A stretch of DNA of 64,000 bases from Asterias rubens (Eukaryota): positions 2,976,001-3,040,000 of the forward strand of contig NC_047073.1 of the NCBI RefSeq assembly GCF_902459465.1, given 5' to 3'. Below, in pieces: positions 28,270 to 32,599 of this stretch. Below the pieces are notes generated by a model. That model had not been told where the DNA came from. It made no database searches and was given only the letters and a program-made list of their open reading frames with translations. Made by a program: the position numbers and the translations under genes. Position 1 is the first letter of the stretch; every line of letters starts with the position of its first letter.

Positions 28270-28884
28270 CTTATGGGCCGCCGACCGAGAGCTGTGATCC
28301 ACTCACGCAACTCGTTGCGTGACGACCGGTAAGCTGAGATGTATTGGCCTATTACTCTGGTGCTCAGACTTCATGAAACCTTCTCCACAAAGGCCATAAT
28401 TGCAGATGAATTCAGGCTTTAAAGTATAACCCTTTCCCCTCAGAATTGGGGGAAATGCTTTATGAAAACAGCCAGCAAATCGGTTGGGAAATAATACCGA
28501 TAGGCCTATGCTTCTTTTCTGGGGATAGGAATTATTATAGCAACAATTCCAAACCTGCCAAAAATCGAAAAGAAATCTGAAGTTTAGTATTGTGAAAAAT
28601 ATAATATTTGATAGGTTTATTTCAATGGTCTGAGAGACTTTAAAATATTTATGTGTGGTAATTTGAATAGCATTTGGTATTGAATTTACTAGCATTAATG
28701 AGCCACATGACTTTATTAGCGTGATGGTCACAGATCACCCAGCCTAGCCTGTGCCTGCGTGGAGAGCACAGACATAAAGAACCTTTTGTCTGTGGTCGAG
28801 AGCGTTGTGTATAGCGCCCTCCTTCGACGTAGCGTGCCTAGTAACCTAGACACTCGTGATTACTTCCTGGTTGACGGCATGCAT
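28270..28884 (+). promoter_or_regulatory. NXNL2 promoter region with candidate non-coding first exons
   Basis: CpG-richer blocks ending in donors CCG|gtaagc (28328) and CAT|gtaagt (28884); acceptor ccttaccctatcag| at 29820 lies upstream of the ATG. Confidence 0.4.
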
Positions 28885-29862
28885 GTAAGTTTTTCCGTCG
28901 ACTTTCTAACCGGTGTAATTTTACATAACAATGTTGACAACCGTCGGGTTGTCTGGGACAAGTTGTAAAGGCAAATCAAACTATCCATTTAAATTTTAAT
29001 AGTGTATAGATAGACGTCAAGTTGGTGTTGCTGTCAGAGTGTGGGTTTGGGTCACAGTCTCATTTACTTAACACTTTTATTATTGCTTGAGCAAGTGTAT
29101 TTAATAAAACATGATTACTGCTTTGCCCTTTGACACTGAGCATGTAGCTCCCATGTGTTGGATAACTTTCCGTATGGCGCCACCACTTATTCACACATTT
29201 TTACAAAAAGGGATATCTCATTGAGGTAAATTAGATACTATATTATTTCATATCGAATTAAGAAGTGGTGGCGCCATACGAAAACTTTTCCCAAGAACCA
29301 GTTGTCAACAAGGAGGCCAATATTACCTGGTACCCAACACATTTGGTTGATCATGGGTACCAGTTGGTATCATCAGCCGCTAGTCAACAAATGGTCATTA
29401 ATATGCAAACTTGGTCGATGTGTGCAACTCCTTGTGTAGTAATCGTTATTGTTTCAATTAACTCCCACTTTTCCAGATGCCTGGAATTTCATCTTTGAGA
29501 GGGCAAGGCCATTTTGATTTTGCCAAATCTCAAGTGTGTGGGAAACGATGGGTCGAGACCAGGGCACCAGGGGCCATGGTCAATGTCAGCTTCATTGGAC
29601 TCTGCATAGTTCCAGAAATCCTAGTTTCCTGTCTAATTTCTCTTCTAATCGTTTTCCCGTCTTTTTTTATTTGTTCAATTTTGCAGTGGGCCAGGGCGCA
29701 GCTTCACACGATTTTCTGACGAAGCTTGAATGAATTCATTAAGACCATAATATCACCAAGTCTTGCTGTAGGGTTCCCAACACCTCTTCTGCCAGGATAT
29801 TGTGCACCTTACCCTATCAGGCAAAAAGTCGCTGGACGTCTGTGGAGCAGACACTGACCATC

Positions 29863-30155
29863 ATGGCCGAGCTGTTTCAAGGGAAGACACTTTCAAGCAA
29901 AACGCTTTCCGAGGTGGACATACAGGAGGCATTGCAGAATCGTGTGGTAGGGCTGTACTTCTCAGCAGCATGGTGTCCTCCATGTAGACAATTCACTCCA
30001 ATGCTAAGAGAGGTGTATGAGGAACTCAGGACGCGGGGAGCACCGTTTGAGGTCGTGTTTGTTTCCTCGGACAAAACTTCAGAGAATTTACGGCAATACA
30101 TGATGGATGAACATGGCGACTGGTTGTATGTTCCCTTTGGAGATCCCTTAATAAG
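29863..30155 (+). CDS. NXNL2: NXNL2 coding exon A
   Basis: ATG in accATCATGG context; ends ATAAG|gtgat. Confidence 0.92.
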
Positions 30156-30702
30156 GTGATAATTACATTATTTCTATGCTGACAACCACACAAAAATGAA
30201 CCCCTTGCACAATGTGCATCGCACCTACAAGAGCTCATCCTGTCCGCCATTTTGAGGGGGGTCTTGACTGATCTATTAAGCCCGGCCCACAAAGTTGTGC
30301 AACAAGGTTTTTTTCTCTTGCAACTTAGATGACCAATTGAGTTCAAACTTTCACCGGTTTGTTATTTAATGCATTGTTGAGATACACCAAGTGAGAATAC
30401 TGGTCTTTGACAATTACCAACAGTGCCCAGTGTCTTTAATCAATTCACAGCCCATCAGCTAAGATCAAAGAAATTACCAATTATGTGCAATGAAACCTCT
30501 CTATTCCGCAAACATAATAAGATTTTCCTCTTTCTGCTTTTCCTTTAGTGAGCTAAAGAGCAAGTACAGCGTCACTGCCATACCCCAGCTCATTATCATC
30601 AAACCAAATGGAGACATCATAACCCCTCTAGGACGGAAACACATCCAGGATCGCGGTGTATCCTGTTTCACCAGTTGGTCACAGACAATGGAGAAACACT
30701 GA
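29863..30702 (+). CDS. NXNL2: Nucleoredoxin-like protein 2 (RdCVF2-like thioredoxin), join(29863..30155,30549..30702), 148 aa
   Basis: ALQNRVVGLYFSAAWCPPCRQFTP, PFEVVFVSSD, HGDWLYVPFGDP, KYSVTAIPQLIIIKPNGDIITPLGRKHIQDRGVSCFTSW closely resemble vertebrate NXNL2; phase-2 GT-AG intron restores the frame (293+154=447 nt). Confidence 0.93.
30376..30440. mobile_element. Terminal fragment of the abundant Kolobok-type MITE inside the NXNL2 intron
   Basis: gttgagatacaccaagtgagaatactggtctttgacaattaccaacagtgcccagtgtctttaa matches the end of the 48374-48762 copy. Confidence 0.7.
30549..30702 (+). CDS. NXNL2: NXNL2 coding exon B
   Basis: tttctgcttttcctttag|T GAG CTA AAG... to TGA at 30700-30702. Confidence 0.92.
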
Positions 30703-32030
30703 GGGTTCAGACAGATGCGTAGGTTGCTCCTAGAAGGTACACATGCAGCGGACAATCAGATTTATAGAGCTGCTAAACACACAATTTACCATGGCTCGGG
30801 AAATTACCTTTCTCTGTGGTTAAACAGTGGCGAGCAATCAACTTGGATTTCTGTGTGATGTAAATTATGCATATATGTACAGATTTTAAAAGATGAACGG
30901 ATTTGCAGTTAGCTGAATCTAAAATTTACCTCCAGAAAATGAATTTTCTCCAGCAAATAGGGGAATTAATTTTTGGGAACAGTTTTGCTATACATGTATA
31001 TATATATATACAACATAAAGCATTTATATTCAGAAAAGTTCTTTAAGTGTAAAATGCAGTCAAATGTGGGCTGAAAATCAATGACCCACCAGTGCTAAAC
31101 AGTTTCTGTGGCATGTAGCATGCTAGCCTTTTCCCAAGTGATTTTTATTTGTGAGTATGTGTCACTCAATAACATCTGCACACAGTGGTCTAGAGCTCGA
31201 AATTTGAAAGAAAAAAAATCCCCAATATAGCAGTGCTTGGAGCTGAAAGCAGGACCAGAACTTGTTCACAATACTAGAATCAAAATGACACAATGTGACA
31301 CTCACAGTGACACATGACACAATGTCAGGGCAAGTGTCCTGGTGCCCCCTGTTGTTGTTCTGGTGCCCGATTGACATTTTCCTCATTAGAGGTGCACCTC
31401 ACCATGGGGACAATTTCCAGGCCCCTTCAAAAATCAAAGTTCATCGGGCATGACATGTATTTTTGGCATTCATTAAAGAATATCCATGTCTTTTTAAAAA
31501 GCTGAAAATTATCTTGCTCTGAGCTGGCTACATAAAAGTAGATAGATTCCAAAAATCTACTCGGCAAGTAGATACACACATGGTTTTACCGCAAACCAAA
31601 TATATATAGATAGATTCACAAAGCAATTAGGGGTGCCCTGCAGTGACGTGATAACTCTGCAATTTGACCCATCACCCCATCAAAGAAGGCAGCCTAGAGG
31701 CTGTTTTTATGAATGTACATGTACCCTTCAAAAAGGCTAATGATGTATCGAGCCTTTGGGCAAGGCTATCCTAACATGCTCAGCAGAATAATGATATTTG
31801 GCTGGGGGAATTGATCTGCAATGTCACCTCACAGAAATACCCTGTTTTTAATGTTAACTGTTGTGTGATTTTAGTCGCCTTTGAGTGCAATCTCCTTTTT
31901 ATAAAATTATATAAATTATACTTTTATCGTTGGTAGGGGTCTGGTTTTAGTATCTTAAGATGACAGTTTGTATAACTCTGTATAACATTGACAGCCCCTG
32001 TTTAACTTGTAATCATTGTGGAAGATTTAG

Positions 32031-32040
32031 AATAAATAAA
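32031..32040 (+). terminator. Candidate NXNL2 polyadenylation signal
   Basis: Overlapping AATAAATAAA about 1.3 kb after the stop. Confidence 0.35.
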
Positions 32041-32599
32041 AGTAAAACCGACACTTTTGCACCAGAAACATTGGGGAGAATGGTCAGTTTTTTTGTAGTA
32101 ACAAGGTTCCTCAGCTAATTTACCTTAAATACAGTACAACAGGATTCATGTATGTGTCCCACACTAAAGTACAAAGCAATTATAGTTAAAAGCTTTGCCC
32201 GAGGACATAGTTCTCACGGGGTGGGGGGGGGGGGGGGGTGGGTGGTCACCACACTCTGACATCTGGAATTATCTGTTGCACTATAGACCACTCAAAACGC
32301 ACATAAGCCAAGACTCCACAACATTTGTTTGAATAGTATGTGAATTTCATAGGTTACAAAGTCTTAAAGAAAAAAAATACACATTTTGTTTTTAACGCCT
32401 AACCAGGGCAAGTTTTTTTCTGTTGTATTGTGGCGTTTTCAGCATTTAAATCCTTTCCTCTCAGTGGAAAACACTTGTAAGTAGCAATGTCTTTTGGGGA
32501 TTGGTGTTCTTACAAATTTAAACATCAAGCTTCAAATAGGTATATTCAGATGTCTGTGCTGTATAAACTAACTAAAGTGTTGGTGTCCAGGGTATACAC

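What the first reader, a model, noticed from the sequence alone, without database searches (positions are those of the whole stretch)
30151..30159. Intron retention would yield an RdCVF-like truncated trophic factor
The coding intron begins ATA AG|G TGA, so read-through ends one codon into the intron and gives a 98-aa product lacking the C-terminal part of the thioredoxin fold. Vertebrate Nxnl1/Nxnl2 make the short trophic factors RdCVF/RdCVF2 in this way, by retaining the equivalent intron with an immediate stop. The donor (gtgata) is also weaker than consensus. The dual enzyme/cytokine gene design could therefore exist in an animal without rods and cones. Caveat: GTGA donors give such stops by chance fairly often.
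Basis: partly seen in the sequence, partly recalled or inferred. Interest (0 to 1): 0.7.

Follow-up and report, generated by a model that had tools for sequence, protein, structure and literature searches.

The report
Sea star NXNL2 intron stop codon
The common sea star's nucleoredoxin-like 2 gene has the same intron and immediate stop as the vertebrate gene that makes a short survival factor, but the stop follows from ordinary splice-signal letters, the RNA seen is almost all spliced, and the idea is already published for other eyeless animals.

Summary
Observation confirmed. The window is Asterias rubens. At 29863-30702 lies the annotated gene 'nucleoredoxin-like protein 2' (148 aa, WCPPC active site). 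It has one coding intron (30156-30548, 393 nt, phase 2). Read-through gives ...GDPLIR, then TGA at 30157-30159, so 98 aa.

The intron sits in the same alignment column and phase as the lizard NXNL2 intron, so 'equivalent intron' holds.

The stop is no more than chance gives. In a phase-2 intron, any GTAA or GTGA donor reads xxG-TAA/TGA. Eight of 11 homologues have the immediate stop, and all eight have such donors. The three with GTGG, GTTT or GTAC donors (sea cucumber, acorn worm, tick) lack it. This fits the roughly two-thirds expected (P about 0.45).

In four RNA-like runs the spliced junction is always present. Contigs from the unique part of the intron appear in only two runs, at 1.3% and 3.5% of the spliced contig's depth. 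That is the level of unspliced precursor.

Retention-made RdCVF in animals without rods and cones is already published for Hydra, scallop and amphioxus. Echinoderms were not in that work.

Verdict: an ordinary, constitutively spliced NXNL2 orthologue. A working short isoform is not excluded, and I put it at about 12%.

The parts
29309..29435 (+). Non-coding 5' exon (its start is a lower bound), joined to the acceptor at 29687. An alternative 5' exon ending at 28884 joins the same acceptor.
   Evidence: Contig joints 29435>29687 (X8) and 28884>29687 (X9), both GT..AG. Donor letters.
29687..30155 (+). First coding exon: 5'UTR 29687-29862, CDS 29863-30155 (residues 1-97 plus 2 bases of codon 98). 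Carries the WCPPC active site.
   Evidence: exact spliced map to P0001. Pfam Thioredoxin_8 E=1.5e-17. Contigs.
30156..30161 (+). Splice donor GTGATA (exon side AAG). It is sub-consensus at +5 and +6.
30157..30162 (+). In-frame TGA followed at once by TAA, read only if the intron is kept. Ends a 98-aa product ...GDPLIR.
30156..30548 (+). The only coding intron: 393 nt, phase 2, GT..AG. Orthologous in position and phase to the vertebrate NXNL2 intron.
   Evidence: Not conserved beyond about 45 nt against a related asteriid.
30310..30445 (.). Interspersed repeat of about 130 nt inside the intron. It cannot be used to measure retention.
   Evidence: More than 4000 first-look candidates in the genome, copies about 90% alike. 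Very high summed contig depth in all runs.
30549..32050 (+). Last exon: CDS 30549-30702 (stop TGA 30700-30702), then a 3'UTR of about 1.35 kb. AATAAA at 32031. Some contigs run on to about 32134-32205.

Best explanation
This is the Asterias rubens orthologue of NXNL2, a 148-aa tryparedoxin/nucleoredoxin-type thioredoxin with an intact WCPPC site. It is made from a constitutively spliced two-coding-exon gene. The intron is ancient and keeps its position and phase 2 across bilaterians. The stop right after the donor is a mechanical by-product of that position. In phase 2 the first intron base completes a codon, and bases +2 to +4 (T-R-A in the common GTAA and GTGA donors) spell TAA or TGA. The small amount of intron-containing RNA is most simply unspliced precursor. 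Shown here: gene structure, orthology of the intron, dependence of the stop on donor letters, and dominance of the spliced form. Inferred: that the protein acts as a disulfide reductase, and that the intron signal is precursor rather than a mature retained-intron mRNA.
For: The spliced CDS equals XP_033636656.1 'nucleoredoxin-like protein 2 [Asterias rubens]'. It is 54% identical over 144 aa to lizard NXNL2, whose identity is confirmed by 89% identity to Pogona NXNL2. The intron is in the same alignment column and phase 2 in 11 homologues. The immediate stop is present in the 8 with GTAA/GTGA donors: Asterias, a second asteriid, Patiria, Acanthaster, Amphiura, Anneissia, one unnamed eukaryote contig, and lizard. 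It is absent in the 3 without such donors: Holothuria GTGG (stop 42 codons in), Ptychodera GTTT (4 codons in), Ixodes GTAC (44 codons in). 8 of 11 is not above expectation. The spliced joint is in 4 of 4 runs, at contig depths 133, 188, 23 and 9.9. Unique-intron contigs occur only in X7 (30129-30343, depth 4.65) and X8 (30162-30312, depth 2.5). Runs X1 and X2 hold about 2% of intron words. The intron sequence decays to noise about 45 nt after the donor against a related asteriid, while the exons stay almost 90% identical over the 5'UTR and coding stretch compared. One third of the intron is a young interspersed repeat.
Against: Only assembled contigs were available, not raw reads, and tissues are hidden behind coded run names. 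A cell-type-restricted retained isoform would therefore be diluted or missed. In X1 and X9 a 3% isoform would fall below assembly depth, so their silence says little. All four sea-star donors lack the usual G at +5, which fits a kept sub-optimal donor, though only 2-3 independent lineages are involved. The retained intron is the last intron, so a retained mRNA would escape junction-dependent decay (inference). Retention has been shown by RT-PCR in Hydra, scallop, amphioxus and lamprey.
Confidence: 0.8

Rival explanations
1. Regulated retention of the intron in particular cells (for example the optic cushion, nerve cord or tube feet) yields a 98-aa truncated thioredoxin-like protein. It would be secreted unconventionally and signal through a basigin-like receptor, as RdCVF/RdCVF2 do in vertebrates and as reported for Hydra and scallop.
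For: The architecture is identical to NXNL2: same intron position and phase, stop one codon in, and a 98-aa product against 101 aa in lizard. The product is cut at the same place in the fold. The sub-consensus donor lacks +5 G in all four sea stars. Intron-bearing contigs exist in two runs while the flanking intergenic DNA has zero depth, so they are RNA and not DNA carry-over. No exon junction lies downstream of the stop (inference). There is precedent in other invertebrates.
Against: The intron signal is only 1.3-3.5% of the spliced form, and no contig was shown to span the whole intron. By comparison, the paper reports lamprey retina RdCVF at about a quarter of RdCVFL. The stop tracks the donor letters and is lost in sea cucumber, acorn worm and tick. 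The intron shows no conserved elements. No protein, secretion or receptor evidence could be obtained here.
Confidence: 0.12
2. Retention occurs but is non-productive. A detained or slowly spliced intron would tune the amount of the full-length enzyme without the short protein having a role.
For: There is a low but real intron signal in the two highest-expressing runs. The donor is sub-consensus. The retained form would carry a 3'UTR of about 1.9 kb, which could make it unstable (inference).
Against: Nothing distinguishes this from plain precursor RNA. The level is within ordinary background, and no conserved intronic element was found.
Confidence: 0.06

Closest known systems
Vertebrate NXNL2 (RdCVF2 / RdCVF2L)
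   Same: Protein of about 150 aa with the Thioredoxin_8 fold, 54% identical to lizard NXNL2. One coding intron at the same codon and phase 2, with a stop one codon into the intron in lizard (101 aa) as here (98 aa).
   Different: The sea-star protein keeps the full WCPPC redox motif, where lizard has WCSLC. Substantial intron retention is documented for vertebrates in the literature but was not seen here. No receptor or trophic data exist for echinoderms.
Invertebrate NXNL genes with reported retention (Hydra NXNLa/b, scallop NXNL, amphioxus NXNLa; Ait-Ali et al., bioRxiv 10.1101/2022.01.06.475223 and PMC9396122)
   Same: Same concept: a spliced form gives an active thioredoxin, and the last-intron-retained form gives a truncated protein of about 104-108 aa ending at an in-frame intronic stop. 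This includes an animal without eyes.
   Different: In those species retention was shown by RT-PCR, and for Hydra also by peptides and receptor binding. Echinoderms were not among the species studied. Hydra genes have five introns and scallop has two coding introns, against one here.
16-kDa thioredoxins / tryparedoxins (PDB 2lus, 4fyu, tryparedoxin structures)
   Same: These are the closest solved structures by sequence: 2lus E=3.6e-41, 4fyu E=8.8e-37, tryparedoxins about 1e-18. They share the WCPPC-type single-domain reductases of about 145 aa.
   Different: They are known as enzymes only, and no truncated signalling isoform is attached to them. Their gene structures were not examined here.

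Membership tests
NXNL (nucleoredoxin-like 1/2) genes | Single tryparedoxin/nucleoredoxin-type thioredoxin-fold domain of about 150-215 aa | tested here: met
   Pfam Thioredoxin_8 E=1.5e-17 on exon 1, and the tail of the same model on exon 2. PDB relatives. AF2 model with mean pLDDT 80 and thioredoxin-like strand/helix order.
NXNL (nucleoredoxin-like 1/2) genes | Closest named relatives are NXNL2 rather than multi-domain nucleoredoxin | tested here: met
   54% identity to lizard NXNL2. Profile search returns proteins named NXNL2 from echinoderms, hemichordates, molluscs and vertebrates. Own-genome paralogues on contig C5 are only 38-45% identical. No formal tree with NXNL1 and NXN was built.
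NXNL (nucleoredoxin-like 1/2) genes | Coding intron at the conserved position splitting the fold before the cis-Pro loop | tested here: met
   Same alignment column and phase 2 in Asterias, 3 other sea stars, brittle star, crinoid, sea cucumber, acorn worm, tick and lizard NXNL2.
NXNL (nucleoredoxin-like 1/2) genes | In-frame stop at or near the start of that intron, giving a product of about 100-110 aa | tested here: met
   TGA at 30157-59, 98 aa. The feature is non-specific, since it follows from phase 2 plus a GTRA donor.
RdCVF-type bifunctional gene (enzyme plus trophic factor) | A sizeable share of mature mRNA keeps the intron in some tissue | tested here: inconclusive
   Intron contigs at 1.3% and 3.5% of spliced depth in 2 runs and none in 2 others. 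These are contigs only, tissues are unknown, and no contig spans the intron.
RdCVF-type bifunctional gene (enzyme plus trophic factor) | Truncated protein exists, is exported, and binds a basigin-type receptor | not testable with these tools
   No proteomic or binding data were reachable. The only database record of the exact 98-aa sequence is a gene call on a 708-nt ENA contig (P0225), probably environmental DNA given the metagenome holders of the intron; it is not evidence of a protein.

The most novel reading that the evidence does not exclude
Sea stars, and by shared architecture brittle stars and crinoids, use cell-type-specific retention of the ancient NXNL2 intron to make a secreted 98-aa truncated thioredoxin. 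It would signal metabolically through a basigin-like receptor. This would extend RdCVF-type signalling to echinoderms and fill the gap between the published cases in cnidarians and molluscs and those in chordates.
Probability: 0.12. Interest if true: 0.5.

Novelty: new member of a known kind. Interest (0 to 1): 0.2.

Why it matters
If a working short isoform existed in sea stars, it would add a deuterostome phylum to the published series (Hydra, scallop, amphioxus, lamprey) and support an ancient origin of RdCVF signalling. The result here is mostly cautionary. An 'immediate stop after the donor' is nearly automatic for phase-2 introns with GTAA or GTGA donors. Neither its presence nor its conservation can therefore be used as evidence for a retention-encoded isoform. 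Only RNA and protein data can decide.

Tried and rejected
- **Conservation of the stop as a test of function.** Rejected as uninformative, because the stop co-varies exactly with donor letters +3/+4.
- **Conservation of intron sequence as a sign of regulatory elements.** None found beyond about 45 nt against a related asteriid.
- **Looking for the exact 98-aa product in the 15-billion-protein collection as a proxy for retained transcripts.** It exists only as a gene call on a 708-nt ENA contig, probably environmental DNA, so it is not RNA evidence.
- **Intron word share across public runs.** Most holders are DNA or marine and macroalgal metagenomes. Only X7 and X8 of the RNA-like runs hold part of it.
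- **Comparing retention with the gene's own 5'UTR intron.** Not possible, because that intron is full of repeats.
- **Measured genome-wide donor statistics for A. rubens.** No annotation or intron set was reachable. Sheth et al. 2006 (PMC1557818) gives the matrices only in figures, so the roughly two-thirds expectation rests on the established MAG|GTRAGT consensus.
- **Scallop positive control locus (P0248).** Not on record.
- **Rfam scan of the gene region.** Only sub-threshold plant miRNA look-alikes in an upstream repeat, dismissed.
- **Sea urchin orthologue.** None appeared among the best 120 profile hits, so that class is untested.

Full report
**What is there.** The window is from Asterias rubens. 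Exon 1 of the gene translates to a protein 100% identical to 'nucleoredoxin-like protein 2 [Asterias rubens]' (P0001, 148 aa, XP_033636656.1). An exact spliced map gives CDS 29863-30155 plus 30549-30702, with one coding intron of 393 nt (30156-30548, GT..AG, phase 2). Unspliced RNA would therefore read ...GDPLIR and stop, giving 98 aa. A TAA follows the TGA directly.

RNA contigs add the untranslated parts. A non-coding 5' exon (29309-29435, or an alternative one ending at 28884) is joined to the acceptor at 29687. The 3'UTR runs to about 32050, after AATAAA at 32031, with some contigs reaching 32134-32205.

**What the protein is.** Exon 1 matches Pfam Thioredoxin_8 (E=1.5e-17), and exon 2 matches the end of the same model. 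The nearest solved structures are 16-kDa thioredoxins (2lus, 4fyu) and tryparedoxins. The redox motif WCPPC is intact.

An AlphaFold2 model (mean pLDDT 80) shows strands 28-34 and 62-68 and helices 39-57 and 73-83 in exon 1. Exon 2 supplies most of helix 95-103, the Ile-Pro loop, strands 111-115 and 121-122, and helix 128-145.

**Is the intron 'equivalent' to the NXNL2 intron?** Yes. P0015 is lizard NXNL2, 89% identical to Pogona NXNL2 and with hundreds of vertebrate NXNL2 hits. It is 54% identical to the sea-star protein over 144 residues. Its single coding intron maps to the same alignment column and the same phase 2, and its read-through also stops after one codon, giving 101 aa.

I found the same position and phase in these homologues:
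- Patiria
- Acanthaster
- a second asteriid (L001)
- the brittle star Amphiura
- the crinoid Anneissia
- the sea cucumber Holothuria
- the acorn worm Ptychodera
- Ixodes (its intron 2)

**Is the stop more than chance?** No. In phase 2 the first intron base finishes a codon, and bases +2 to +4 form the next one. With the usual donors GTAA and GTGA, that codon is TAA or TGA.

Across the 11 homologous introns, the immediate stop is present in exactly the eight with GTAA or GTGA donors:
- Asterias
- L001
- Patiria
- Acanthaster
- Amphiura
- Anneissia
- the unnamed contig L012
- lizard

It is absent in the three with other donors:

| Species | Donor | First stop |
|---|---|---|
| Holothuria | GTGG | 42 codons in |
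| Ptychodera | GTTT | 4 codons in |
| Ixodes | GTAC | 44 codons in |

Taking about 0.66 as the share of donors with R at +3 and A at +4, 8 of 11 has a binomial tail of about 0.45. The 0.66 comes from the established MAG|GTRAGT consensus and was not measured here.

Many unannotated short gene calls among the homologues also end one residue past the boundary. That shows how common the pattern is. Conservation of the stop across four of five echinoderm classes is therefore real but carries no information about function. No sea urchin orthologue turned up among the best profile hits.

**The donor.** AAG|GTGATA matches 5 of 9 consensus positions, with a predicted U1 duplex of -6.7 kcal/mol against -11.8 for a perfect site. 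All four sea-star donors lack G at +5. This is a mild hint of a kept sub-optimal site, but it rests on two or three independent lineages, and such donors are common.

**RNA.** Only assembled contigs of public runs could be laid, so depths are rough. The spliced joint (skips 393, GT..AG) is present in all four runs, in contigs of depth 133 (X7), 188 (X8), 23 (X1) and 9.9 (X9).

Contigs in the unique part of the intron occur only in two runs:
- X7: 30129-30343, depth 4.65, or 3.5% of the spliced contig.
- X8: 30162-30312, depth 2.5, or 1.3% of the spliced contig.

Flanking intergenic bins have zero depth, so this is RNA and not DNA carry-over. No contig spans the intron, and the level is what unspliced precursor gives. 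In X1 and X9 a 3% form would be too thin to assemble, so their silence is weak evidence. A word search with the intron alone found it mainly in DNA and marine metagenome runs. X1 and X2 hold about 2% of its words.

The middle of the intron (about 30310-30445) is an interspersed repeat with over 4000 candidate copies and cannot be used. Against a related asteriid, the exons are almost 90% identical over the 5'UTR and coding stretch compared, but the intron loses all similarity about 45 nt after the donor.

**Prior knowledge.** Ait-Ali et al. (bioRxiv 10.1101/2022.01.06.475223; review PMC9396122) report the following:
- Intron retention of NXNL genes gives RdCVF-type proteins in Hydra, which has no eyes. 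This is backed by peptides and receptor binding.
- The same occurs in scallop, amphioxus and lamprey.
- They conclude that the signalling predates photoreceptors.
- They note that every Hydra NXNL intron has an in-frame stop, yet only intron 4 is retained. That agrees with the point that a stop alone says nothing.

Echinoderms are not mentioned in either text, and I found no paper on echinoderm NXNL genes.

**Mechanism and odds.** My odds are:
- About 0.8: an ordinary, constitutively spliced gene for an active thioredoxin-like reductase, where the stop is a by-product of intron phase and donor consensus.
- About 0.12: a working RdCVF-like short isoform made in particular cells.
- About 0.06: non-productive retention as a dosage control.

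One inference favours feasibility of the short form. The retained intron is the last one, so no exon junction would lie downstream of the stop. The 3'UTR would, however, grow to about 1.9 kb.

**Verdict.** This is a new member of a known kind and of low interest unless tissue-resolved RNA or protein data show the short form.

Noticed in passing
window 30310-30445: The NXNL2 intron holds an interspersed repeat of about 130 nt. The genome has over 4000 first-look candidates, and scored copies are 88-93% identical. Summed RNA-contig depth over it is enormous in all four runs, so it is embedded in many transcripts.
   Followed up: partly
window 29104-29639 and 31516-31649: Two further stretches with very high summed contig depth, presumably repeats. 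The first lies in and around the 5'UTR intron and the second inside the 3'UTR. The first gives only sub-threshold look-alike hits to plant miRNA families MIR7723 and MIR2619, which I take as chance.
   Followed up: partly
window 28884/29435 to 29687: Two alternative non-coding first exons are joined to the same acceptor. The donor at 29436 (TGT|GTAGTA) is very poor (3 of 9 consensus letters), yet it is used in the highest-expressing run.
   Followed up: no
L017 (Holothuria leucospilota orthologue P0263): The sea cucumber protein reads WSPPC instead of WCPPC, so it lacks the first active-site cysteine. It also lacks the immediate intronic stop.
   Followed up: no
G000 contig C5: 3835002-3847426 and 15705597-15741780 (L004-L008): Five weaker matches (38-45% identity) in two clusters, probably multi-domain nucleoredoxin-type genes. 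In L004 the exon seems to end one base later (phase 0, AAG|GTAAAA) than in the NXNL2-type gene, with a stop five codons into the putative intron. This was judged from the sequence only.
   Followed up: partly
runs X15-X22; protein P0225: The sea-star intron and the 98-aa open frame turn up in marine and macroalgal metagenome assemblies. This is presumably environmental DNA of Asterias.
   Followed up: no
window 32215-32245: A run of about 20 G with a few interruptions lies just past the longest 3'UTR contigs.
   Followed up: no
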